Below, one piece after another: positions 18,903 through 33,112 of a stretch of DNA of 64,000 nucleotides. The position numbers were made by a program, and so were the translations under genes. This DNA is from Lepidodermella squamata. Its lineage: Eukaryota; Animalia; Gastrotricha. The notes beneath the pieces were generated by a model that saw nothing but the letters and a program-made list of their open reading frames with translations, was not told the DNA's origin and did not search any database. The DNA is taken from positions 2,356,001 to 2,420,000 of the forward strand of contig JBLDXI010000032.1 in assembly GCA_047495785.1 (NCBI GenBank), written 5' to 3'. Each line of letters begins with the position of its first letter. Positions within the stretch are counted from its first letter, which is position 1.

Positions 18903-21209
18903 ATGACATCTCGTGAAAATGGTCGGAATGCACCGATCGCAACTGGTGACGACTCGAGTGTATCTTCTATCGTCGAGGGAATGGGCGGATCTTCGGTGAG
19001 CAGCAGCGACCCGGGCACAATCAGCGCGGCGGCTCATCGTACCTATGTCGCGAAGTCTTACCTTCAGAAAAATGAACTGCTAACCGAAGTTCAGCGACTG
19101 CGGATAGAATTAAGGCGGAAAAATGACGAATTGGAACATGTGCAAAATCAAATGATCCTGGCGGTCGATGATCGGGAGGATCGAATCGACGATCTGATGA
19201 GGGAAAACGCTCGCCTAAAACAATCAATTTGCAAGGAGGAAACAATTATAGGTGAACATGCGAAAATGCAAGACGAAGCCCTGAAACGTGAGTTGAACGT
19301 TCTTCTTGAGCGAGTTCACGCCCTAGAAGCTCTCAACGTTCGGCTTACTGGCGAACAAGCCGTTGCTAAACAAAGCTTTCGGTTGATCCGTCTTACTGAA
19401 AGCGAATACACCGAATTGAAAGCTGCAGAACTGAGAAGCGAGCTGTCATTGAGTGAGCTAGTTTCGATCCGAGTCTATGAAGAGCTTCGTGAGTTGGCTA
19501 AACAGCTCGCTGAACTCACCGATGACCGGAGAAGGTTGGACGAGGAGAACCGAAGCATGAAATCTCAATTCGGCTCGTTGCAGCGCCAACTCGAGGAAAA
19601 AAGTGACGAGTCTGAACAATTAAGGTGGACCAACATCCGGCTCGAGAAACGTTTGACAAACTTACTAGGCGGCCCTGGGGCAGTTGCGATGCACGAACCA
19701 CATTCTTTGACTGAACCAACGGCTTTCGTCGAATCAGCTAAGCCGGTTTCGATGGTTGAGAGTGAAATGGCTCGTTTACGATCGCAGCTTGACAGTGTTA
19801 CATCTCATTTGACCAGTGAACGAGAGCGACTTGTTCGAGAGCTGGAATCAGCGCGAGATGCCCTCAGGGTCGCGGCTGATGAAGGGAACATGCTGCGCCG
19901 GCAAGCTATCGACGCGGGTCAACGAAGCGTTTTTCTCGAGGAGCGACTAGCGTCTTTGTCAGCCCAACTCGATGCTGTGAAAAACGGTCGAGAAGAGCTG
20001 CTCGAGAAATATTTGACCTCAAAGGATGAAGCTAGGTCTGAATTCAATGCTAAGATCATTCACGAACTTGATGAGCTTCGCTCGAAGAATTCGTCCGAAT
20101 ATGAACGGCTACATCGCCAGATGAAAGAAGTGTTCGAGCAAGAGAGCGCCTCCTTAAAAGACGCGAGGGATGCTGCGATTGCTGAAAGAGACCGAGCGCT
20201 AGCCGCCGAACAGGAATCTCGCTCGAGATACGAAAAAATGCTGATGGAGTGAGTTGATCAATTTATTAAGGTGGATTTTTTTAATTAACTATTTTGCAGA
20301 TTCAAAAATTTGGAATTTTCGTTGGAAAGCCAAACTGCTGATTTGGTATCTCAACTGCGCGTCAAAACGTTTGAGCTCGACCGTTTGCGTACATTGCTCG
20401 AAGAAACAGATGCGAATTTACGCGCCACAAAAGATTCGTACGAGTCAATCCGGGAGAAGTTCGACGCCTTGCTGCGGGACCACCAGTCGTTTGCTTCAGA
20501 AGCTGCTTTTGAGCGCAAAAAACTTACGGATGAGTTGGAAATGGCTCGTCAGAAGTTGACTGCGTTCGAGCGGACCGAGGCTGATCTCGACGATTTGGTC
20601 ATGCAGGCTGCTGATACCGGCATGGGGAATGAAGCTGAGCGAGTGCTTGTTTCTTATGGCGCTGTTGCAGCGGTACCGCCGTCGTTTCGTCGTAGAATCG
20701 AGCAGTCTGTTCGGTTGGCTCGGCGAGTTTTGGAACTCGAACGGGTTAATAATGTTCTCAAATCTGACTACGAGAAGAAGGCGAATGAAGTCACCCGTTT
20801 GCATATGGAGGTGTCGGATTTGAGTAATCTTCTATCGCTTTCTCGGAATTCTGATCAAAAAGTGATAGTCGAAGCACTTCGGACTAGAGATGAAGAGTTG
20901 AGAATGCTCAAAACTAGAATTCACGAATTGGAGTGCCAAATTGATGCTGCTAGGCATGAATTGACTCAACTAGTGAAAGAAAAGGAAGAAATGGCAAGAG
21001 ACATGCAAACTTTATTGAGCCATCGAGACGAATTGGCTGCTATTCATCAGCAACTCAGTCATTCCAGGACGTCCAAACACGATCAGTTGTCGCCTAATAA
21101 TGGCAACAAGCCGAAATCTCAGCCAAACCGTCGGCCAAATTTGAATGGCCAGAAAAAGCCGAATGCTCATCATCACAATATAATATCGCCTCCTGTGCTG
21201 CTACACTAG
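18903..21209 (+). CDS. PIBF1: Progesterone-induced blocking factor 1 / CEP90
   Basis: Two ORFs joined by intron 20249-20299; coiled coil with the conserved SYG...RRRIEQSVRLARRVLELE segment. Confidence 0.85.
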
Positions 21210-21515
21210 CCAAATATCGCGTTGATACTGCTCATTTTCTTTGTTTTTTATACTCTACAAATTTCGCACTGCATAATTTGCTATAATACTGTTATTGTGA
21301 TTTTTCTGAAATGTCACTTTTTGATACACTCTTGCAATAAAAATGGCTTATTTCTCATTGTTATTTCATTGATTATTATTTATTGTTTTCTAGCTGGGCG
21401 GCGCAGATTTATTGAGAAAGCTGACGATGATTTTCAAGGATTGAAATCATTTATTATAATCGTGATATTTTCCAGCCGAGAAAGATCTGAATTATACATT
21501 CTAGATTTTTTACGA

Positions 21516-23660
21516 ATGGGTGTCGCGAATTTTACGGACACGTCCGTCAAAATAGTCTCAATTGAATCGGGGGACAAATTGGTTTTTAATAATGAAGCGT
21601 TGGAAGAAATCGTCCGAGGTGTTTCCAACCTTCGCACGGCTGCCATCGTGATTGCAGGTCCGAAAAGAAAAGGCAAATCTTTCCTGCTGAACGTTCTTCT
21701 GTCCTACCTGTACAGCCGCGAGAATAAACAAGAGTGGAGTTACGCGGATAGCAAAAATTTTGTTCGAGGTCGCGGATTCGCTTCGAGCGGCGGAACCAAT
21801 GCTGTTACTGTTGGACTGCATATTTGGAGCAGACCATTCATCCTGACTAAGGCCAATGGCACTCAGTTCGCCTTGTTTGTCTTTGATATGCAAGGCTCTT
21901 TTGACCCGACGTCCAGTGAAAACATGGAGTCAGCATTGCTTGCGATCGGTGGCGCTATTTCAAGCGTAACCATTATCAACATCGACCAGCAAATTGACGC
22001 AAAGATTTTATCAAGTCTGGCCAGATGCGTATCCCGCATTCAACTCGCCGAAAAAAGTTTCCGAAATCAGACAATTTCGAGCGATGAAGCAACTAAAGTC
22101 TTCCAGGTTAATGCGCCTATTGTTAAATTCTCATAATTTAATGATCGTTTTTGTGACAACAGAAACTCCTGTTCCTGGTTCGAAACTGGAACTCGGTAGA
22201 GGAATTTGACTACGGTGAAAAGGGCGGACGGCGCTACCTTGAAAAAGTTCTAAGCAACTCGGCTGAGCAGAGCGAGACAGGCATGATGGTTGAATCGATA
22301 AAATCAAGTTTCGAGGAAACTGATGCGTATCTAATGCCGATTCCTTCGAAGGCTCTTATGTTAGGCGAGCTGGAAAATCCAAAATGTATGAGAGATGTGC
22401 CTAAAACTTGAAAACCTTATTCATTTTTCTTATTCTCTAGGCTTCAAAGAAAATGAATTTTCGTCCTTCATGTCGGGTTTCGTCAAATTCCTGGTCAATC
22501 CCGAAAACTTGCCCCTCAAAGCGTATTCTGCTGGAGCTATGATTGAGCTGATGCAGTCACAAATTGACGCATTCAACAATTCTGGCCGAATTCCACGGAT
22601 TATCAGTGGATTTTTACAAGATCACTGCTCTGCGTTGTTCAAACGCGCCAAAGCAGAATATAGCCGCGGTTTTGCGGAATCAAAGTTTTATTTGGAAGAT
22701 AAGAAGAAATTAGAAACAGAGTTTTACAATGATGTGAAAAGCAAATTGCAGGAGAACCTGAAGAAGTGGAGTAACGATCGAGATTACGTCGATTCAATGC
22801 ATGCCTTTCGCCAACATGTGTTACGACTGAGTCGTATCATGGCTTTATGGAAAAAACTTGTCGATTGTCGCAAGTCGGTTGCTCTAAGTTTGAATAAATT
22901 GGCTTTTGAAATTGGCAAGTTGAATACCCAGGCTCGGACATGCCGCTTGACCGGCTCATCTGCAGGAATAGCTGCAAGTGGCTTGTCAATAGCTGGGTTA
23001 GCTCTAGCTGTCCCAACGGCTGGAGCTTCATTAGCGTTGACTGCAGCTGGAGCAGCCTTGGGCGCTTCAGGGGCTGTTACTGGCCTTGTACCTACCGCCA
23101 TGCTTGCCGCAAAAAGTAAGGCGGCTCGAAAAAAAGCCGAGCGCCTGATTTTGTCCGCGAGCGAAATTGACCAAGAGCTGCGCAATGAGCTTGGATATCT
23201 TGATGATGCCACTGAAACCGAACCATTTCTCACTTTGATCACAGCTCAACGTGTTATTATGGCTGCTCAATTTGGAATTGGAATAGACAAATCAAACGAA
23301 TATTCTGAATTCTATGCCAAGATAAGCGAAATCCTCAGCGACTTAGACAACGCCAGTGGTGTCATCGTTACCTCAGTTAAAAGCAGTGCTGCCATTGCCG
23401 CCACTATCGAGGATTTCGTTAGCCCTTCACTTCGAGCCGTAGCAACGATGGGAAAAACAGCCGCGGGTACTCTGGCGGTTGTCACAGTTCCTTTTGATGT
23501 GATCAGCATCGTGACTGATAGCATCGACACGCACAAAGGAAAGCCACATAAAATGGAAGAAAAGATTCGCGAAATCGCCGCAAAATTTAAAGCAGCACCG
23601 CAATCGTCTGATGTTGAAAGAATCGAAGCGCAGTTTGCTGATTTCATCAAGAAATTGTGA
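21516..23660 (+). CDS. Atlastin-like GTPase / apolipoprotein-L fusion protein, copy 1 (677 aa)
   Basis: Exons 21516-22106, 22163-22385, 22441-23660 total 2034 nt in frame. G1 GPKRKGKS, G2 Thr in AVTVGLHIWS, G3 DMQG, G4 LVRNW. ApoL hairpin GLALAVPTAGASLAL and C-terminal DVISIVTDSIDTHKG helix. Confidence 0.88.
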
Positions 23661-24236
23661 ATGCCTGACCTTGAGCGATGTGTGTGATGATCCATTTATG
23701 ACCTAGATAACTTCACTGATTCGAAATCTTGTAGACTCTCTCAAATTCAAATGACATGCTTCTCCGACAAACGCTACAATCTCATTAATCTATGATAATA
23801 ACTAATCTCAGCGTAAAGGAATTAAACTTATGTTTTGATTTGGCATTTTATCGGTTACTTTGTCAACTGTGCTCAGTGCTCAATTCGATGTAAATGCGCA
23901 TACCTGTGATCATGAGATTTTATCACGATGAACGTTTTGGAGCTATTTCGATTATTCTTTTCAAAACGATGAATGATGGACATGTGACGAATTCATCTTA
24001 TTATTTCTGTATAATCTCGTTATGCAAATGCATGTAGAATACACTCATGCAATAAAAATTGCTTATTTCTCATTGTTATCTCATTTATTATTATTTATTG
24101 TTTTTCTAGCTGGGCGGCGCAGATTTATTGAGAAAGCTGATGATGATTTTTAAGGGTGGAATTTTTTTGTTCTAATCGCAATATTTTCTAGCCGGGCGAC
24201 ATCTGAATATTGAACATCCTAGATTGCTAATTACGA

Positions 24237-26384
24237 ATGGTTTTCGAGAGAGTTATGGGCAAATCTGTCAAAATTGTTTCAATTGAATCAGGTGACAAAT
24301 TGGCATTTAATAATGCAGCTTTGGAAGAAATCGTCCGAGGTGTTGCCAACCTTCCCACAGCTGCTGTTGTGGTTGCAGGCCCGAAAAGAAAAGGCAAATC
24401 TTTCCTGCTGAACGTTCTTCTTTCGTACTTGTACAGCCGCGAGAATAAACCAGAGTGGAGTTACGCGGATAGCAAACATTTTGTTCGAGGTCGCGGATTC
24501 GCTTCGAGCGGCGGAACCGATGCTGTTACTCTCGGATTGGATATCTGGAGCAAACCATTCATCCTGACTAAGGCCGATGGCACCCAGTTCGCCTTGTTTG
24601 TCTTTGACATGCAAGGCTCTTTTGACCCGAACTCCAATGAAAACATGGAGTCAGCATTACTTGCTATCGGTGGCGCTATTTCAAGCGTAACCATTATCAA
24701 CATCGACCAGCAAATTGACGCAAAGATTTTATCAAGTCTGGCCAGATGCGTATCCCGCATTCAACTCGCCGAAGAAAGTAGCCAAACTCCGGCAATTTCG
24801 AGCCAAGAAGCAACTAAAGTCTTCCAGGTTAATGCGCCTATTGTTAAATTCTCATAATTTAATGATCGTTTTTGTGACAACAGAAACTCCTGTTCCTGGT
24901 TCGAAACTGGAACTCGAAAGAGGAATTCGGTTATGGTCAAGCAGGTGGGCGGCTCTACCTTGAAAAAGTTCTAAGCAACTCTGCTGAACGGAGCGAGACA
25001 GATCTGATGGTTGAATCAATCAAATCAAGTTTCGAAGAATGTGATGCGTATCTCATGCCGATTCCTTCGAAGGCTCTTATGCTAGGCGAGCTGGACGATC
25101 CAAAATGTATGAGAGATGTGCCTAAAACTTGAAAACCTTATTCATTTTTCTTATTCTCTAGGCTTCAAAGAAAATGAATTTTCGTCCTTCATGTCGGGTT
25201 TCGTCAAATTCCTGGTCAATCCCGAAAACTTGCCCCTCAAAGCGTATTCTGCTGGAGCTATGATTGAGCTGATGCAGTCACAAATTGACGCATTCAACAA
25301 TTCTGGCCGAATTCCACGGATTATCAGTGGATTTTTACAAGATCACTGCTCTGCGTTGTTCAAACGCGCCAAAGCAGAATATAGCCGCGGTTTTGCGGAA
25401 TCAAAGTTTTATTTGGAAGATAAGAAGAAATTAGAAACAGAGTTTTACAATGATGTGAAAAGCGAATTGCAGGTGAACTTGCAGAAGTGGACGAATGATA
25501 AAAATTACGTCGAATCACTGCATGCATTTCGCCAACATGTGTTACGACTGAGTCGTATCATGGCTTTATGGAAAAAACTTGTCGATTGTCGCAAGTCGGT
25601 TGCTGAAAGTTTGGATCAGTTGGCTTATGACATTGGCAACTTGAATACTCGGGCTCGGATATCCCGTGTGGCCGGATCATCTGCAGGAATAGCTGCAAGT
25701 GGTCTGACAATAGCCGGATTAGCTCTAGCTGTTCCAACGGCTGGAATTTCATTAGGGTTGACTGCAGGTGGCGTTGCTTTGGGCGTTACGGGTGCTGCTG
25801 CTGGCCTTGTACCAACCGCCATTCTTGGCACAAAAAGTGAGAAGGCTTTTCTCGAAGCCGAGCGCCTGATTTCAACTGCAAACGAAACTGACAAAGCCTT
25901 GCGCGCTGAGCTTGCATGTTTGGACGATGCTGCTGGACCTGAAAAATTTGTCAACTATATTACAACTCAATGTTATGTTATGGCTGCTCAATTTAACGAG
26001 GCGAAGGAATCTTGTTTGATTGAAACCGTGGAGAAAGGTTCTCTCCACGCAAGCAAAATTGTCTCCAACGCAGTCGGAGGCGGTCTTGCGATTCCGAAAA
26101 TCGTCACAGCTGTAGAAGAAAGCGTTGGCGCTTCATTTCGAGCCTTTTCTGCGATGGGGAAAACTGCTGGGCGTGTTGCTGGAATTTTATCGGTTGCCAC
26201 CATTCCACTTGATGTGATCAGCATCGTGACGGATAGCATCGATCTGCACAACGGAACGCCACATGAAGCGGCACAAAAGATTTGCGAAATCGCTGCATTA
26301 TTTAAAGCAGCGCCGGACGCGTTCGATGTTGAAATAATTGACAAGCAATTTGCTCATTTCATCCAGGACTTGAGAAATGTCTGA
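24237..26384 (+). CDS. Atlastin-like GTPase / apolipoprotein-L fusion protein, copy 2 (678 aa)
   Basis: Exons 24237-24827, 24884-25106, 25162-26384 total 2037 nt in frame; same motifs and intron positions as copy 1. Confidence 0.88.
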
Positions 26385-27140
26385 CCTTATGCGATGCGTT
26401 TGCTGATCCATTTGTGGCTTCAAAGTTTCAAAATCGTGTGTCTTCTCTCAAATTAAAATTACTTGCTTCTCCGACAACCGCTTCAACTCGTTACTAATTT
26501 ATGATCATTACTAATCTCAGCTTGGTGTAAATAACTAAAGTAATTTTCTGGTGTGATATTTTATGGGACATTTTGTCAACCTTGCTCAATTCGATGTAGT
26601 TGAACATACCTGTGATCATGAGATTATCCTGATGAGGATTTTTGAGCCATTTCGTCTTCTCAAAACGATGAATGATGGAAATGTGACGAATTGATCTATT
26701 TATATCTTTATTATCTCATCGCTACGCAAATGCATGTAAAATTGTGTTTTATGGTGAGTTCAGTAAAAATTTTCGACAAATCAATAAATCGCATCATTTC
26801 GAATTTTCTGTGCTAGTTTCACATTTTCCGCCTTCAAAGTGCATAAGATAAGGTTGATGGAAGACTGACAGAGCAGCCGAGTTGAAAGCAGAGGACACAA
26901 GTTTTAAGGGAAAATATTTATGAAATTCTGTTTCAAACTTGGCCCGTACTAATTGAATCGGGGTTAATAATAAAACTAATCAAATTGCCCTTCATCCAGG
27001 CTATCCAACACTACCCCACTCCTACGGTCTTTACTTGAAAATCATCGATTTTTAATATGCGCAAGCCACTCCATTTTGACAGTAGACAGTAGTCTACAGT
27101 TGACAGTAGTCGTTCAGTCACGAAAACCCTGAGTGGTCGA

Positions 27141-28137
27141 AATGTGACGCGATTGAGTCGTGGGCGAAAACTTGTCGATTATCGCAAGTCAATTTCCAAA
27201 AGTCTGCATACCGTCAGATGGGGCGACTTTGGCCATGGGGGTGACATTGCCATAGGTTTTTGCGATCGAGTTTAGATTACACACGACGTCATTTTCTCAG
27301 ACATGATACATGTCAAGTAGGATGTCAATGGAAATCCCTGATGATGGAGAATTTAATTATATACGTCGTGGAACCTTTTGGGCCGTATGTACCTTGATAA
27401 ATGACGTGGAAGGGTGGCAAAGTGACCCTGAGTACGGTTTAGATGCAGATGGGGTGACTTTGCCCTAACTCAAACCGCAGGTGGAAAGGTGGATACCTCA
27501 CAAGTTGGGTACCGCTGGATAGCTTGTGTCGGGGGCTGCTCGAAAATGACAAGGTCTTTTCATTTTGAGCACACCTGGTCGACTTCAGAGTCATCTATAT
27601 TCTGCCGAAAAGTGTATTTTTTTCGCTCAACTTTACCTGTGTTTAATTACCAGGTATTGTTAAAGGCTGAAGTATGTTCAAGACATTCCAGTTGGTCTTT
27701 TCTCGGGCTTTCCAACGGTATCCCACTCAAGGGGTCTTTATCTTGATACCTCTGAGATATGGCTATGCGAAAGTCGCCCCATTTTTCCGTGGCAATGTCA
27801 CCCCACTGTCCAAAGTCGCCCCATCTGACGGTAATTCGGAAGTTTGCAAGTAGAATACCCTGGCTCTGATTGGTCGCTTGGCTGGAGTGAAATATGTGCA
27901 GGAATAGCCTTAAGTGGCATGACGAAATGGCCGAGTTGGCTCTAGCTTTTCCAACCGCTGGAATTTCATTAGCGTTGCCAGCAAGTGGAGCTGCCTTGGG
28001 TGCTTCGAGCGCAGCTGCTAGCCTTGTACCAACCGCCAAAAAGTAAGGCGGCTCTAGACAAAACCGAGCGCCTGATTGTTACTGCTGACGCTACTGACCA
28101 AAAAGCCTTGCGCGATTAGTTCGGAAATTTGGATGGC
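27141..28137 (+). pseudogene. Decayed ApoL-domain fragment of a fourth paralogue, split by a MITE
   Basis: 27141-27208 and 27834-28137 align to exon 3 of copies 1/2 (aaacttgtcgatt.tcgcaagtc; gcaggaatagc; gccttgtaccaaccgcca) with indels and stops. Confidence 0.85.
27211..27831. mobile_element. Tc1/mariner-pogo-type MITE, 621 bp
   Basis: TIRs of about 42 bp starting CCGTCAGATGGGGCGACTTTGG, flanked by a TA duplication; internal repeats of GGGG(C/T)GACTT. Confidence 0.9.
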
Positions 28138-28728
28138 GAACTGCTTCGAATCTGATGAGAAACGCCACAGGCACTAGAAATAGACGACGCTGCTGGCTGA
28201 AGATTCACCGTTTATATCTCGGATAAATCTACCTCTACAGCAGTAAGGACGATTTCGGAATTTCGTCTTAGACAGTACACCGTAATGTCAATTATTTGAA
28301 GAAGTTATGAATCGCCCATTTGAGGAATATTACTTTTCGACGTTGGCTAAAAGAAAATGTTGGTCATTTTAAAATCTAGGATATCTAGGTGATGGTAACT
28401 CCGTTTTATCATTGTCCGGCATGGTCTCATTTTGACGTCTCTCGATGAAAAATATCGACGCCATTGTTGTAATTTGAGCAAATCGGTCGAAATCGTCTCG
28501 GTGAGAAATGTTAGGAACTTTCAGCGTACCCGTGTTAATTTTCCGTCTTTGTTGCAATTCAAATATTATTTGATTCCCTTACGATATTCTTTAAAGGCAG
28601 TGTTAATAATAAAGTGGGACGGGGCTCGTGCCCTTTTTAGCATTTAAAATGAATCATACTTACTCACGTGTGCTCATTTTTTTATGCCTAAGGGGTTTTT
28701 TTTTATTCGCAACCCTTCGAACAGTATA

Positions 28729-29241
28729 CAGTAGTTATGCGTTAAGCCGGACTCGATCCGCGCCGGAAGAATAAGTCCGGCTTAATGAAAGTCCGCTATA
28801 TTGTAAGCCGGACTGGTCCGGTTTAAAAACAAACGGTGCATTTCTTCAAAAACTACTCAGGAATATCAACCCTATAAAGTTATAAGCCATTTACGTGAGT
28901 AAAAAGTTCGATTATCGAGCTGGAATTAAGTTTTCGCCACACGCGTGAACAGCTATTTTTCTAGACTGCGATCATTTTGCTGTAAATTTTGCTGATGTAA
29001 GCCACCCAAAATCAGCACGAGGGTGTTCATGCGCTCGATATTAAAATTATCCTATAAGCCGGACTTTTTTAACTAAAATTCACTAAAAATCAGTCCGTTA
29101 TAACGCAAGTCCGGCTTATGACAGTCCGGCTTATTGCAACCATTTGCATGTAAAGCGCTAGTCCGCGGCACGAGCCAAGCAAAATGGTCCGGCTAAGCGC
29201 AAGTCCGGCTTATGATCGTCCGGCTTAACGCAAAACTACTG
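28729..29241. mobile_element. Tc1/mariner-pogo-type MITE, 513 bp
   Basis: TIR CAGTAGTT(A/T)TGCGTTAAGCCGGAC; TA duplication; many internal AGTCCGGCTTA copies. Confidence 0.9.
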
Positions 29242-29587
29242 TATACTGTATTTTGTGTATTATCGTTCGAAAATAGCACTCTCTACAAAAAATGCAATAA
29301 CTTTCTACGCGTTCATAAATTCACTATATTTTATACGGTGTAAAGTGTATTTTTCCAGCACTTGATTTTTGAATCTGTATAAAATACAGAAATTGTAAAC
29401 CATTCGCAAATGTGACTTTGTTTATTGGGCGAAATCGATGTGGAGGGTTCGACTCCTCGTGGGGTCAAGCCATTTTTTTGTTTTAATTTTTGCCCCGACA
29501 CTTTTTATGCGCACAAACAGCCCCATTTCTACACTTTGCACACTTTTCCTGGCTGTATTATTTGTAGGAAAAATAGGGCTGTATTTT

Positions 29588-30636
29588 GGTTCTATGTCAA
29601 TTGAGCAAACGAAAATTGAGCAACGAAAATAGAGCAAGGGCTTTTGAGCAACGATATTAGAGCAAACGAAATTAGAGCAAAACGACTTCTGAGCAAAACG
29701 AGATTAGAGCAAAACGACACGAGAGCAAATTTTATTTAAAATAAACAACAGCTGCAATTAATTATTAAATTTGCTCTCGTGTCGTTTTGCTCTAATCTCG
29801 TTTTGCTCAAAAGTCGTTTTGCTCTAATTTCGTTTGGGCTCTACGACAATTTAGCAATACAAAGATGAAATCCGACATTTTTTCTGCGACATTTAATCAA
29901 AGCAAAATAAAAAACGACATTATATAAAACGTAAAACTAGGGCCGACAATTTGGCAATCTTAATTAAGCAAAGACATTTTTAAATAAATATTCTTATGAA
30001 TTTATTTATGTATTAGCCCTCAAAGGTAGCACCGACTTCAACAAAGTAAGTCACGTAGGGAAAAAATTGTAAAATACAAATCAGCGGCGACAAAATGTAG
30101 GTTTCTTTGATAATGAATGAACCGACAAATTAGCGATAGGGGTACGGTTAGGTACGGTGAAGGTGTAGGTATGATAGAGGTACATGGTGTTACCGTGGGT
30201 GCTACCGTAGATCGGTATTGTAAGTTTTAGCATTGGTCACTCCTGGTCAAAGTCGCCTGAACAGCGTTTGATCTCCTAATTTCATCACTTCTGCTCAATT
30301 TTTTCTCGTGAAGCTAGAATTTTTTTGCGGAAATGGTGGTGAAATTAGTTACTTTTGAAAAGGTCTGTGTCAGATTTGTTGTCGCTGGATTGTCGTTCTC
30401 ATTATTTCGGTCAAAATCTAATGTAATGGTAATCAAGGCGATTTTTAACATTTTGTCGGAATTATTTGTGCTTTGCCAAATTGTCGTTTCATAACTTATT
30501 TTGCTAGATTGTCGTAACGCGTTTCGTTTGCTCAGAAGTCGTTTTGCTCTAATTTCGTTTGCTCTAATATCGTTGCTCAAAAGCCCTTGCTCTATTTTCG
30601 TTGCTCAATTTTCGTTTGCTCAATTGACATAGAACC
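29588..30636. mobile_element. Foldback-like element, 1049 bp, with subrepeat-built long TIRs
   Basis: TIRs of about 110 bp starting GGTTCTATGTCAATTGAGC, built of GAGCAA(A)CGA units; 8-bp duplication TGTATTTT (9 bp CTGTATTTT is also possible); extra internal palindrome at about 29665-29836. Confidence 0.88.
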
Positions 30637-31007
30637 TGTATTTTCTGTATTTTTTATTCGAATCCGTAGAAAATACAGGAGAAATACAGTATTTCTGTAG
30701 CGAATTTTCGAATGCAACAAACTGTAGCTGTAGCTGTATTTTCTGTTGCGAATAAAAAAAACCCCTCTTTTGCACAAATTACAAATAAATTTTTTCATTA
30801 GACAATCGAAATATCGCGGTGGCCAACAACTGGTGCTTTCTCAATCTTGGCGTGCGACTCGCGGTCTAGGAATCTTGAATGATTCAGTTTGAATGAGTTT
30901 AGTGACTAGTCTAGATGCGATAGATGTGAAGATTACAATCATTTTTCACGATCGTTACTATCCTGAAAACATCAGAATTATAAATTATTTGTTCACGAGT
31001 AAAAGTC

Positions 31008-33112
31008 ATGAAATCAATGGGAGAACCTGTCAAAATTGTCTCAATTGCGGCTGACAAATTTATTTTCGACAAAAAAGCATTGGAAGAAATCGTCCATGGC
31101 GTTTCCAAACTTTCAACAGCTGCTATCGTGATTGCAGGTCCAAAAAGAAAAGGCAAATCTTTCCTGCTGAACGTACTTCTGTCCTACTTGAAACACTGCG
31201 ACAACAACTCAAAGTGGAGTTACAAGGACAGCGAACCGTATGTTCGAGGTCGCGGATTCGCTTCGAGCTGCGGAACCGATGCTGTTACTGTCGGACTGGA
31301 TATCTGGAGCGAGCCTTTTATTCTGAAGAAGGCCAATGGCAAGATGTTCGCCTTATTCGTCTGCGATATGCAGGGTTTGTTTGACCCGACGTCTAATGAA
31401 AACGTGGAAGCAGCCTTACTTGCGATCTGTGGCGCTATTTCAAGCATAACCATTATCAACATCGACCAGCAAATTGACACGACCATTTTATCATGTCTGG
31501 CCGGATCTATCAGTCGTATTCAACTCGCCGAACAGAAGTACAGAAATCAGGGGGAGGGGGCGGTAAAAGTCTTTCAGGTTGGTATAGACGTACTGTTATG
31601 CACTCATAATTAAGTAATTAAATGATTGTTTTCGGAAACAGAAACTCCTGCTCCTGGTACGAAACTGGAACTCGGTAGAGGAATTTGACTACGGTGAAAA
31701 GGGCGGACGGCGCTACCTTGAAAAAGTTCTAAGCAACTCGGCTGAACGGAGCGAGACAGATCTGATGGTTGAATCGATAAAATCAAGTTTCGAAGAAACT
31801 GATGCGTATCTAATGCCGATTCCTTCGAAGGCTCTTATGTTAGGCGAGCTGGAAAATCCAAAATGTATGAGAGATGTGCCTAAAACTTGAAAACCTTATT
31901 CATTTTCCTAATTCTCTAGGCTTCAAACAACATGAATTTTGGTTCTGCATGACAAGTTTTGTCAATTTTCTGGTCGATCCTGAAAACTTGCCTCTCAAAG
32001 CGCATTTTGCTGGAGCTAATATGGTTGACATGTTGCAGTCAAAAATCGACGCATTCAACAGTTCTGGCCGAATTCCACGGATTATCAGTGGATTTTCGCA
32101 ATGTCACTGCACTTTGTTGCTCGAACGCGCCAAAGCAGAATATCGTCGCGGTTTTGCTGATTCAGAGTTGTACATGGAAAATAGGAGGATATCAGAAGTT
32201 GAGTTTTACAATCGCGTGAAACACCAATTGCTGGAGAAGTTGAACATTTTTAAGGATGGTCAACATCATGTCGAATCACTGGACGCATTTCGCCAGAATT
32301 TGTTGCAACTGTGTCGCATCATGACTTTATGGCAAAGCCTTGTCTATTCTCGCGTGTCGGTCGCTACAAGTTTGAATGATCTGGCAAAAGAAGTTGAGGG
32401 TTCAAATTCTGAGACTCGAGTTAGTCGCTTGGCCGGCTCGACGGCTGGTATTGCTGGAAGTACCATGACGATTGCTGGTTGTGCTCTAGCTCTTCCAACG
32501 GCTGGGATGTCAATGGCGTTGACTGCTGGCGGAGCTGCCTTGGGCGCTTCGGGCGCTGTTGTTGGCCTTCGCGCAACGAACAACCTTCACGCAAAATGTG
32601 AGGCGGCCTTAGCTAAAGCTTTTCAACAGGTTGACATTGCAAATGCAGCTTTCAAAGACTTGTGCAATGAGCTTGAAAAACTGGATAATGCAGCTCACCT
32701 TGACAATTTTATCAGCCTGATTACAAATCAATGTAGTATCTTGACGGCTGTTGCTCGAAGCTTACCATCAGAGTTTGGCGGTTTGGCTGAAACTGTGGCT
32801 GATACTTCAACTCCGCAATGGAGAGAAGTGTTCACTTGGGCCAGAGTTCCGACTGCTTCGCTCTCGGCAATTGTTTCGACTGTCGGGTCGATGGGGAAAA
32901 CAGCTTTGAGGAGTTTCTCATTTGCCTCCATTGCTGTTGATGCGCTCACCGGTGTGAAAGATGGTGTCAACGAGTTACAAGGAAAGCCTCATGAAACGGC
33001 GCTGAAGTTTCGCGAAATTGCTCGAAATTTTGAAGAATTGCCGGCATTTTCTGATGTTTACAACATCGCCACAAATTTCCGTCTGTTCGTCCAGAAATTG
33101 AGAAATGCCTGA
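31008..33112 (+). CDS. Atlastin-like GTPase / apolipoprotein-L fusion protein, copy 3 (661 aa)
   Basis: Exons 31008-31577, 31642-31864, 31920-33112 total 1986 nt in frame; same G motifs and ApoL hairpin (GCALALPTAGMSMAL). Confidence 0.87.

What the first reader, a model, noticed from the sequence alone, without database searches (positions are those of the whole stretch)
21516..33112. Tandem family of atlastin/GBP-type GTPase - apolipoprotein-L fusion proteins: a candidate single-chain membrane-attack system
Seen: in all three copies, two conserved GT-AG introns and a 223-nt middle exon missed by the ORF track join a GB1/RHD3 GTPase to an ApoL domain in frame (677, 678, 661 aa). The GTPase is atlastin-like (GPKRKGKS, GFASSGG...T.G..IWS, DMQG.FD, FQKLLFLVRNW...F.YG..GG..YLEK). 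After a short helical segment, where atlastin has its transmembrane hairpin, comes a full ApoL module: amphipathic helix, Gly/Ala hydrophobic hairpin and C-terminal DV..IV.DS..LH.G helix. There is no signal peptide. Known: ApoLs permeabilise membranes, and human GBP1 and APOL3 cooperate against cytosolic bacteria as separate proteins. Inference: the fusion couples GTP-driven dimerisation or membrane remodelling to ApoL insertion, possibly in cell-autonomous immunity or cell death. I do not know of this architecture being described.
Basis: partly seen in the sequence, partly recalled or inferred. Interest (0 to 1): 0.93.

Follow-up and report, generated by a model that had tools for sequence, protein, structure and literature searches.

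The report
Atlastin-like GTPase fused to ApoL
Three neighbouring genes of an invertebrate animal each join an atlastin-type GTPase to an apolipoprotein-L membrane-insertion module in one protein, a pairing that also arose separately in sturgeons, gars and bowfin and that mirrors the GBP1-APOL3 partnership of human cell-autonomous immunity.

Summary
Three tandem genes (677, 678 and 661 aa), each with two short GT-AG introns, are in frame and have no internal stops. Pfam places the GBP/atlastin G domain (PF02263) on exons 1-2 and ApoL (PF05461) on exon 3.

The fusion does not depend on the splice model. Homology to the genome's own canonical atlastin runs through both junctions into exon 3, the same exon that carries ApoL. 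Contigs of a probable RNA run break exactly at the exon edges and read from exon 1 into exon 2.

On a tree the G domain falls on the atlastin side of the atlastin/GBP split (100/100). The atlastin transmembrane hairpin is replaced by the ApoL module. All three copies read RN where 118 of 120 atlastin homologues read RD, the motif that recognises guanine.

No orthologue turned up among 1.84 billion representative proteins. The architecture itself is not unique: true GBP-ApoL fusions, annotated only as "GBP2/4/5-like", occur in sturgeon, paddlefish, bowfin and gar. They are an independent fusion (AU p 0.012). I found no paper describing either one.

Function is inferred, not shown: nucleotide-gated ApoL membrane insertion, probably in defence or cell death. 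I rate it a new variant of known kinds, interest about 0.7.

The parts
21516..22106 (+). copy 1, exon 1: N-terminal two thirds of the G domain (P-loop GPKRKGKS at 21657-21680, DMQG)
   Evidence: Pfam GBP E 1.6e-19; atlastin-1 E 1.5e-19; RNA contig runs from 22106 into AAACTCCTG, the start of exon 2
22107..22162 (+). copy 1, intron 1 (GT..AG, 56 nt)
   Evidence: spliced out in X1 contigs, retained in the DNA run X2
22163..22385 (+). copy 1, exon 2 (223 nt): G4 region, LVRNW at 22175-22189, Asn codon at 22184-22186
   Evidence: Pfam GBP profile 159-230; atlastin-1 residues 213-274, FLVRDW versus FLVRNW; X1 record 2 lies only on this exon
22386..22440 (+). copy 1, intron 2 (GT..AG, 55 nt)
   Evidence: X1 records 2 and 3 stop and start at its edges
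22441..23660 (+). copy 1, exon 3: end of the atlastin-like G domain, helical linker, ApoL domain (Pfam match 22887-23585; hydrophobic Gly/Ala hairpin 22956-23111), stop codon
   Evidence: blastp to the own atlastin continues to residue 295; Pfam ApoL E 8.9e-16; hydropathy; all-helical AF2 model
24237..24827 (+). copy 2, exon 1
   Evidence: X1 loose end AAACTCCTG behind 24827
24884..25106 (+). copy 2, exon 2
   Evidence: X1 record 8 ends at 25107 with 30 further letters
25162..26384 (+). copy 2, exon 3 (linker + ApoL)
   Evidence: Pfam ApoL E 1.5e-17
27927..28134 (+). remnant of a fourth copy: ApoL hairpin fragment, frame-shifted and with a stop
   Evidence: tblastn residues 455-526 in two frames; genome search hit with 1 TAA
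31008..31577 (+). copy 3, exon 1
31642..31864 (+). copy 3, exon 2
31920..33112 (+). copy 3, exon 3 (linker + ApoL)
   Evidence: Pfam ApoL E 1.9e-10; the probable RNA run holds only 14% of this copy's words

Best explanation
SHOWN. The locus is a lineage-specific tandem family of three intact, spliced genes plus one remnant. At least copies 1 and 2 are transcribed. Each gene encodes a cytosolic single-chain protein built from an atlastin-clade GB1/RHD3 G domain, a helical linker and an ApoL module. The ApoL module, with its Gly/Ala hydrophobic helix-loop-helix and C-terminal helix, takes the place of atlastin's transmembrane hairpin and tail. A fusion with the same layout arose independently from true GBPs in non-teleost ray-finned fishes.

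INFERRED. The G domain works as a nucleotide-dependent dimerisation or assembly switch, as in atlastin and GBP1. This switch concentrates and triggers insertion of the ApoL hairpin into a target membrane, giving permeabilisation or remodelling. The most likely setting is cell-autonomous defence or regulated cell death. The protein would thus do in one chain what GBP1 and APOL3 do together in human cells. The RD-to-RN change suggests altered nucleotide preference or a binding-only switch.
For: Gene structure and reading frames. Domains; atlastin-1/3 are the best solved relatives.

Colinearity: copy 1 residues 10-295 align to the own atlastin residues 22-296 across both junctions, and exon 3 carries both the atlastin-homologous stretch and ApoL.

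Transcription: X1 contigs break at the exon edges and read from exon 1 into exon 2, while X2 (DNA) spans the intron. X1 holds 67% of copy 1's words but 14% of copy 3's, whereas X2 holds 81% and 74%. X1 therefore behaves as RNA.

Catalytic motifs: the P-loop with its internal Arg, the switch-I Thr and DxxG are all kept.

Selection: dN/dS is 0.35-0.38 on the GTPase and 0.44-0.55 on the hairpin, against 0.7-1.1 on the rest of ApoL. A hypervariable tract, tandem duplication, a pseudogene remnant and gene-conversion tracts complete a pattern typical of defence effector families.

Independent recurrence: fish GBP+GBP_C+ApoL proteins, one on an intron-less 2391-nt transcript-like contig. The tree split is 100/100, and the AU test rejects one clade at p 0.012. 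In both lineages the ApoL module starts at Pfam position ~50-70, after about 150-200 helical residues.

Literature: GBP1 and APOL3 act synergistically on membranes (PMC13702560). GBP1 and atlastin hydrolyse GTP in G-domain dimers using an internal Arg finger (PMC5084822).
Against: There is no functional data of any kind. The guanine-specifying Asp of the RD motif is Asn in all three copies, against 0 of 120 atlastin homologues, so GTP binding may be weak or changed.

dN/dS near 1 in parts of ApoL could reflect relaxed constraint rather than diversifying selection. The RNA evidence comes from assembled contigs of one run whose RNA nature is a guess, and no single contig was shown to span the whole mRNA. 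Copy 3 is barely represented in that run.

The structure model is of moderate confidence (pLDDT 69.5) and has no specific fold match. Immune induction, subcellular location and the target membrane are all unknown.
Confidence: 0.5

Rival explanations
1. The protein is a housekeeping membrane tether or fusogen. It would be a divergent atlastin paralogue that uses the ApoL hydrophobic hairpin only as a monotopic membrane anchor in place of the TM hairpin. It would remodel ER, lipid-droplet or mitochondrial membranes with no role in defence.
For: The G domain is on the atlastin side of the tree. The hairpin sits exactly where atlastin's anchor sits. The genome carries other atlastin-like paralogues with different tails: L009 has no TM segment and L011 has a single C-terminal TM segment. 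APOLs are also proposed to control membrane dynamics generally (abstract of PMC13177371, as listed; the paper itself was not read).
Against: A canonical atlastin is already present (L010). No orthologue was detected in 1.84 billion representatives, which argues against a conserved housekeeping role. Tandem multiplication, a pseudogene remnant, fast evolution of the ApoL half and a long stem branch are unusual for a core organelle factor. The parallel fish fusion comes from GBPs, which are immune GTPases.
Confidence: 0.25
2. The G domain is a pseudo-GTPase or scaffold that has lost GTP use because of RD to RN. It would serve only as a dimerisation or targeting domain, and the ApoL part would act constitutively or under other control.
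For: Asn replaces the guanine-binding Asp in all three copies, and none of 120 atlastin homologues has this. The G4 Asp mediates guanine specificity, and EHD proteins show that G4-region changes can switch nucleotide use (PMC5084822).
Against: The P-loop, Arg finger, switch-I Thr and DxxG are intact, and the G domain is under purifying selection (dN/dS 0.35-0.38). This fits a working nucleotide pocket, possibly with changed base preference.
Confidence: 0.2
3. The fusion is an artefact: two separate genes (a GTPase and an ApoL) wrongly joined, or decaying pseudogenes.
For: No full-length transcript was seen in one piece. Copy 3 is poorly represented in the probable RNA run.
Against: Exon 3 is one uninterrupted ORF that contains both atlastin-homologous residues and ApoL. 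Three copies keep the whole frame open at dS up to 0.8. Contigs break at the predicted junctions.
Confidence: 0.03

Closest known systems
Atlastins (ATL1-3, Drosophila atlastin; GB1/RHD3-type dynamin-like GTPases of the ER)
   Same: The G domain is best matched by atlastin-1/3 structures (E about 1e-19). It is colinear with the genome's own atlastin over residues 10-295, has the P-loop with internal Arg, switch-I Thr and DxQG, and groups with atlastins at 100/100.
   Different: There is no TM hairpin and no C-terminal amphipathic tail; an ApoL module replaces them. The G4 motif is RN instead of RD. The clade has a very long stem branch and is not an atlastin orthologue, since the canonical atlastin is elsewhere in the genome (L010). 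It is a tandem family with no detected orthologues.
Apolipoprotein L family (APOL1-6; PF05461)
   Same: The Pfam match is above threshold. The Gly/Ala-rich hydrophobic helix-loop-helix and the C-terminal D..IV..S..LH.G helix are present. Nearly invariant family columns are kept: A154, G185, T192, G194, S196, L199, G203 and D352 of exon 3.
   Different: There is no signal peptide. The first ~70 positions of the Pfam model are missing and replaced by the GTPase and linker. Identity to any ApoL in the databases is only ~25%.
GBP-ApoL fusion proteins of non-teleost ray-finned fishes (annotated 'guanylate-binding protein 2/4/5-like'; e.g. XP_058865344.1 of Acipenser ruthenus; also Polyodon, Amia, Atractosteus)
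   Same: They share the order and proportions: G domain, then ~150-200 helical residues, then ApoL from Pfam position ~50-70, for ~690-750 aa in total. In both, the usual membrane-attachment end of the GTPase is replaced.
   Different: Their GTPase is a true GBP, with a GBP_C middle domain and an intact RD motif. It lies on the other side of the 100/100 split, and a common clade is rejected (AU p 0.012). These are independent fusions, not orthologues.
Human GBP1 + APOL3 two-protein system against cytosolic bacteria / in phagosome permeabilisation
   Same: It uses the same two protein superfamilies acting on one membrane, with a dynamin-like GTPase preparing the membrane for an ApoL (PMC13702560).
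   Different: The human partners are separate, interferon-induced proteins. Here they are a single chain, the GTPase is atlastin-derived, and no activity or induction has been shown.

Membership tests
GB1/RHD3-type large GTPases (GBP/atlastin superfamily, PF02263) | Significant match to the G-domain profile | tested here: met
   Exon 1 scores 63-71 bits and exon 2 scores 29 bits, against a cut-off of 21.1, on contiguous profile positions
GB1/RHD3-type large GTPases (GBP/atlastin superfamily, PF02263) | G1 P-loop with internal arginine finger, switch-I Thr, G3 DxxG | tested here: met
   GPKRKGKS aligns to atlastin-1 GAFRKGKS; the Thr in ..AVTVG.. and DMQG align to atlastin-1. The roles of these residues are taken from PMC5084822
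GB1/RHD3-type large GTPases (GBP/atlastin superfamily, PF02263) | G4 'RD' motif (Asp binds the guanine base) | tested here: not met
   All three copies read VRNW. 118 of 120 atlastin homologues read RDW and none reads RNW
GB1/RHD3-type large GTPases (GBP/atlastin superfamily, PF02263) | Nucleotide-dependent G-domain dimerisation and cooperative GTP hydrolysis | not testable with these tools
   This needs recombinant protein.
Atlastin proper | G domain in the atlastin clade | tested here: inconclusive
   It is on the atlastin side of the GBP/atlastin split at 100/100. It lies outside the canonical atlastin orthologue group, on a long branch
Atlastin proper | Two closely spaced TM helices plus a C-terminal amphipathic helix | tested here: not met
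   Replaced by ApoL. The only hydrophobic stretches are the ApoL hairpin (444-495) and the 608-634 helix. The own atlastin L010 has the TM pair
Apolipoprotein L (PF05461) | Significant match to the ApoL profile | tested here: met
   41-64 bits against a cut-off of 25.9, on profile positions ~70-290 of 298. The nearest Atlas clusters are ApoL, score 0.93
Apolipoprotein L (PF05461) | Gly/Ala-rich hydrophobic helix-loop-helix and conserved C-terminal helix | tested here: met
   Hydropathy; nearly invariant family columns kept in a 60-sequence alignment
Apolipoprotein L (PF05461) | Complete domain including the N-terminal part of the model | tested here: not met
   Profile positions 1-69 are not matched in any copy
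Apolipoprotein L (PF05461) | Membrane insertion / ion-channel or lytic activity | not testable with these tools
   This needs liposome or cell assays
Fish GBP-ApoL fusion family | Common origin of the fused GTPase (one clade) | tested here: not met
   A 100/100 split separates them. Forcing one clade costs 39.8 lnL, p-AU 0.012, though the group was named after the tree was seen

The most novel reading that the evidence does not exclude
Fusion of a GB1/RHD3 GTPase to ApoL has happened at least twice, once from the atlastin clade in this invertebrate and once from the GBP clade in early ray-finned fishes, with nearly the same junction. This would be a 'Rosetta stone' showing that large-GTPase/ApoL cooperation is a direct, physical and ancient mechanism: a nucleotide-gated alpha-helical pore-former. 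It would not be a mammal-specific coincidence of two interferon-induced proteins. The invertebrate version may in addition have switched its nucleotide (RD to RN).
Probability: 0.35. Interest if true: 0.85.

Novelty: new variant of a known kind. Interest (0 to 1): 0.7.

Why it matters
How GBPs hand a membrane over to APOL3 in human cell-autonomous immunity is still argued from models. Natural single-chain versions fix the stoichiometry and the orientation of the two modules. They therefore offer a simple system for testing whether nucleotide-driven G-domain assembly directly gates ApoL insertion.

The same join arose twice, once from atlastin-type and once from GBP-type GTPases. In both cases it replaces the GTPase's own membrane-attachment end. 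This is comparative evidence that the pairing is functional rather than accidental.

The finding also extends ApoL-based effectors to an invertebrate lineage. It flags a set of mis-described fish "GBP-like" genes. And it supplies a natural RD-to-RN variant for studying nucleotide specificity in this superfamily.

Tried and rejected
(1) The search for homologous proteins with exon 3 gave one weak fish ApoL only. This shows no close relative, but the tool's word and length filters limit what that means.

(2) The profile search of 1.84e9 representatives found 801 ApoL-type hits. None scored below 1e-30 and none covered the linker, so no orthologue was found. Only 150 rows could be inspected.

(3) The linker (first 151 aa of exon 3) had no significant match in the PDB by sequence. 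Only its first ~25 residues align to atlastin by blastp. I therefore do not claim an atlastin three-helix bundle.

(4) The AF2 model of exon 3 (pLDDT 69.5) gave no specific fold match. Foldseek against the PDB had no hit at E<=1e-3; the weak top rows were ClyA-family alpha-pore-forming toxins (AhlB, SmhB, MakA). VIA-align wide reached Z<=10.6 on generic helical bundles, below the ~13 background for helical models. The Atlas by shape gave nothing relevant. No fold claim is made.

(5) Atlas feature searches showed no cluster combining GBP and ApoL.

(6) Six literature searches and one targeted read found no description of a natural GBP/atlastin-ApoL fusion. The library lacks most subscription journals.

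(7) The two-separate-genes artefact is rejected; see the rival explanations.

(8) The full-length spliced protein could not be given to Pfam, the folding tools or the complex tool, because it has no reference and long letters must not be typed. Pieces were searched separately and the joined protein was used only inside scripts. Complex prediction was not used because only a partial G domain could have been supplied.

(9) Species identity: the own atlastin is ~53% identical to mollusc, annelid, nemertean and vertebrate atlastins alike, so only 'bilaterian invertebrate' can be said.

Full report
**1. What is in the sequence**

The window is animal DNA. Its genes have short introns and include CCDC154, a rhodopsin-type GPCR, a FIP-RBD protein and PPCDC. 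The genome is 121 Mb in 151 contigs.

Between 21516 and 33112 on the + strand lie three paralogous genes. I rebuilt each from the raw sequence:
- c1: 21516-22106 / 22163-22385 / 22441-23660, 677 aa.
- c2: 24237-24827 / 24884-25106 / 25162-26384, 678 aa (672 aa from an alternative ATG at 24255).
- c3: 31008-31577 / 31642-31864 / 31920-33112, 661 aa.

All six introns are GT..AG and 55-64 nt long. The middle exon is 223 nt in every copy. Every joined frame is open to the stop codon.

A frame-shifted, stop-containing fragment of the ApoL hairpin at 27927-28134 is the remnant of a fourth copy.

**2. Domains**

- Exon 1 matches the GBP/atlastin G-domain model PF02263 at E 1.6e-19 to 2.3e-17.
- Exon 2 matches the same model at profile positions 159-230, directly after exon 1's 3-156.
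- Exon 3 matches ApoL PF05461 at E 1.9e-10 to 1.5e-17, over profile positions ~70-290 of 298.

The ApoL call is echoed by the Atlas feature search. It is also supported by a profile search of 1.84 billion representatives, whose 801 hits all align to the ApoL part.

The proteins have no hydrophobic N-terminus. Their only strongly hydrophobic stretches are the Gly/Ala-rich helix-loop-helix at residues ~444-495 and a helix at ~608-634.

**3. Is it really one protein?**

Three lines of evidence say yes.

- *Colinearity with atlastin.* blastp of c1 against the genome's own canonical atlastin is colinear from residue 10 to 295, against atlastin residues 22-296. That atlastin (L010) is a single-exon, 510-aa protein with GAFRKGKS, FLIRDW and a TM pair. 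The alignment runs straight through both junctions: VFQ|KLLFLVRNW against PFQKLVFLIRDW, and ..PKC|FKENEFSSFMSGFVKFLVNPENL against ..IDPEFIQNLNVFVPGILGSENL. Exon 3 is one uninterrupted ORF that holds both the last atlastin-homologous residues and the ApoL domain. The fusion therefore does not rest on any splice prediction.
- *Conservation of the frame.* All three copies keep the complete frame although they have diverged to dS 0.2-0.8.
- *Reads.* I laid two public runs on 21200-26600. Run X2 behaves as genomic DNA, with a contig spanning intron 1. In run X1, contigs end at 22106 and at 24827 and continue with AAACTCCTG, the first nine bases of exon 2. One contig lies only on exon 2, with unaligned overhangs on both sides. 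Another begins at 22441 after 24 unaligned letters. Another ends at 25107 with 30 more letters.

X1 holds 67% of c1's sampled words but only 14% of c3's, whereas X2 holds 81% and 74%. So X1 behaves as RNA, c1 and c2 are expressed and spliced as predicted, and c3 is weakly represented or absent in that sample.

Caveats: these are assembled contigs, the RNA label is the tool's guess, and no single contig spans the whole mRNA.

**4. What kind of GTPase**

The best solved relatives of exons 1 and 2 are atlastin-1, atlastin-3 and Drosophila atlastin.

I built a maximum-likelihood tree of G domains. It included the three window copies, three own-genome paralogues, 12 atlastins, 14 GBPs and 6 fish fusions. 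A 100/100 branch separates an atlastin side, which holds the window copies, from a GBP side. The window clade sits on a long stem outside the canonical atlastin orthologues, so it is atlastin-derived but is not 'the' atlastin.

The genome also has atlastin-like paralogues with other tails. L009 continues into a soluble coiled-coil and low-complexity tail. L011 ends in a single TM segment.

The catalytic apparatus is kept: the P-loop with internal arginine, the switch-I Thr and DMQG. One defining feature is not. The 'RD' G4 motif, whose Asp binds the guanine base in GBPs and atlastins (PMC5084822), reads RN in all three copies. In contrast, 118 of 120 atlastin homologues read RDW and none reads RNW.

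In Ras-type GTPases the equivalent Asp-to-Asn change shifts preference toward xanthine nucleotides (my own knowledge, not tested here). The same review notes that EHD proteins of this superfamily use ATP because of changes around G4. The nucleotide used here is therefore an open question.

**5. The linker and the ApoL half**

Only the first ~25 residues of exon 3 are demonstrably atlastin-like. The remaining ~120 residues before ApoL have no detectable relative.

An AlphaFold2 model of exon 3, built on a 60-sequence alignment, is all-helical. It has a long helical hairpin whose tip is the hydrophobic Gly/Ala segment. Mean pLDDT is 69.5. Fold searches gave nothing specific. ClyA-family alpha-pore-forming toxins top the Foldseek list, but at E about 0.1-0.4, and I do not count that as evidence.

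**6. Evolutionary behaviour**

- dN/dS is 0.35-0.38 on the G domain and 0.44-0.55 on the hydrophobic hairpin.
- It is 0.6-1.1 on the rest of the ApoL half.
- Between c1 and c2 the nucleotide identity is 100% over 22395-22694 and 22095-22194, stretches that include both introns. This indicates recent gene conversion.
- Identity falls to 43-61% in 23195-23476, inside ApoL.

Tandem copies, a dead copy, conversion tracts and a hypervariable effector segment are the usual signature of defence gene families. Relaxed constraint cannot be excluded.

The genome holds only one other ApoL-like gene, a stand-alone one on contig C74 whose hairpin is 45% identical. It has no other GTPase-ApoL fusion.

**7. 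Is the architecture known?**

No orthologue exists among 1.84e9 representatives. Of the 34 longest ApoL hits, however, one carries GBP + GBP_C + ApoL. It is 'guanylate-binding protein 5-like' of the sturgeon Acipenser ruthenus.

Searching with that protein found the same architecture, 690-750 aa, in four more taxa:
- Polyodon spathula;
- Amia ocellicauda (two genes);
- Atractosteus spatula (two genes);
- Acipenser sinensis (fragments).

All are named only as GBP2/4/5-like. A 2391-nt Logan contig encodes a 714-aa sturgeon version without introns, so it is evidently an mRNA.

Their layout parallels the window proteins: G domain, then the first half of GBP_C (~150-170 aa), then ApoL from Pfam position ~50-60. 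Their GTPases are true GBPs with an intact RD motif. They lie on the GBP side of the tree. Forcing them into one clade with the window copies is rejected (delta lnL 39.8, p-AU 0.012; the group was named after the tree was seen).

The two fusions are therefore independent. In both, the part that normally attaches the GTPase to membranes is replaced by ApoL. For atlastin that part is the TM hairpin and tail. For GBP it is the C-terminal helices and lipid anchor (the latter from my own knowledge).

I found no paper that describes either fusion. The library lacks most subscription journals, so this is not proof.

**8. Most likely mechanism**

Shown: the architecture, at least partial expression, intact catalytic motifs apart from G4, and purifying selection on the G domain and hairpin.

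Inferred from the families: atlastin and GBP1 G domains dimerise across the nucleotide site and hydrolyse GTP cooperatively (PMC5084822). ApoLs insert a hydrophobic helical hairpin into membranes. In human cells GBP1 and APOL3 act together on one membrane (PMC13702560). The simplest reading is a cytosolic, nucleotide-gated ApoL: G-domain assembly raises the local concentration, releases the hairpin for insertion and permeabilises or remodels a target membrane, in defence or cell death. I give this about 0.5.

The main rival, at 0.25, is a housekeeping atlastin-like tether or fusogen that uses the ApoL hairpin merely as an anchor. A pseudo-GTPase scaffold reading (0.2) overlaps with both. An annotation artefact is nearly excluded (0.03).

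**9. Verdict**

Novelty: a new variant, namely a new domain combination from known families with an unusual G4 motif.

Interest is about 0.7. Two independent natural single-chain GTPase-ApoL proteins make the proposed GBP-APOL coupling directly testable.

Noticed in passing
window 22095-22194 and 22395-22694 versus 24816-24915 and 25116-25415 (approx.): Copies 1 and 2 are 100% identical over stretches that include both introns, while the flanking coding sequence is 81-95% identical. These look like recent gene-conversion tracts inside the tandem pair.
   Followed up: partly
window 23195-23476 (copy 1) versus the matching part of copy 2: There is a hypervariable tract inside the ApoL half (43-61% nucleotide identity, with indels), lying between the hydrophobic hairpin and the conserved C-terminal helix. 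It may be a specificity-determining segment.
   Followed up: partly
L004 733-1761 (G000:C74, about 951632-952660): This is the genome's only other ApoL-like gene. In its 342-aa open frame the C-terminal-helix motif (IPLDVWILIQEASKLHKDEP) comes before the Gly-rich hairpin. That suggests tandem ApoL repeats or a permuted or multi-exon arrangement.
   Followed up: no
L009/L013 (G000:C54:3254000-3260000) and L011 (G000:C24:4880247-4883684): Two further atlastin-like paralogues have non-atlastin tails. One continues into a soluble coiled-coil and Ser-rich tail. The other ends in a single C-terminal TM segment and has KD instead of RD in G4. The atlastin family in this animal seems prone to tail swapping.
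   Followed up: partly
proteins P0067, P0280, P0283-P0286 (Acipenser, Polyodon, Amia, Atractosteus): A conserved GBP+GBP_C+ApoL fusion family in non-teleost ray-finned fishes is annotated only as 'guanylate-binding protein 2/4/5-like'. One member sits on an intron-less 2391-nt transcript-like contig (L016).
   Followed up: partly
proteins among P0002-P0151 and P0334: ApoL domains in fishes are also fused to RING fingers (2 proteins), a myosin tail, a sulfotransferase fragment and a protein kinase (Pseudorasbora). Some proteins carry several ApoL repeats (P0004, 1092 aa). ApoL behaves as a promiscuous effector module, although some of these may be gene-model artefacts.
   Followed up: no
P0003 cluster (7 members, 272 aa, JGI/Logan contigs of ~1 kb): The second-best match to the window's ApoL half (E 2.5e-24) is an unnamed 272-aa ApoL protein known only from short environmental or transcript contigs. 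Its organism is unknown.
   Followed up: no
window 18903-21209 (+): Directly upstream of copy 1 lie two long ORFs of a coiled-coil protein with a weak Uso1/p115 C-terminal match. A probable RNA-run contig covers 21200-21351, apparently its 3' end. It is unrelated to the fusion family.
   Followed up: no
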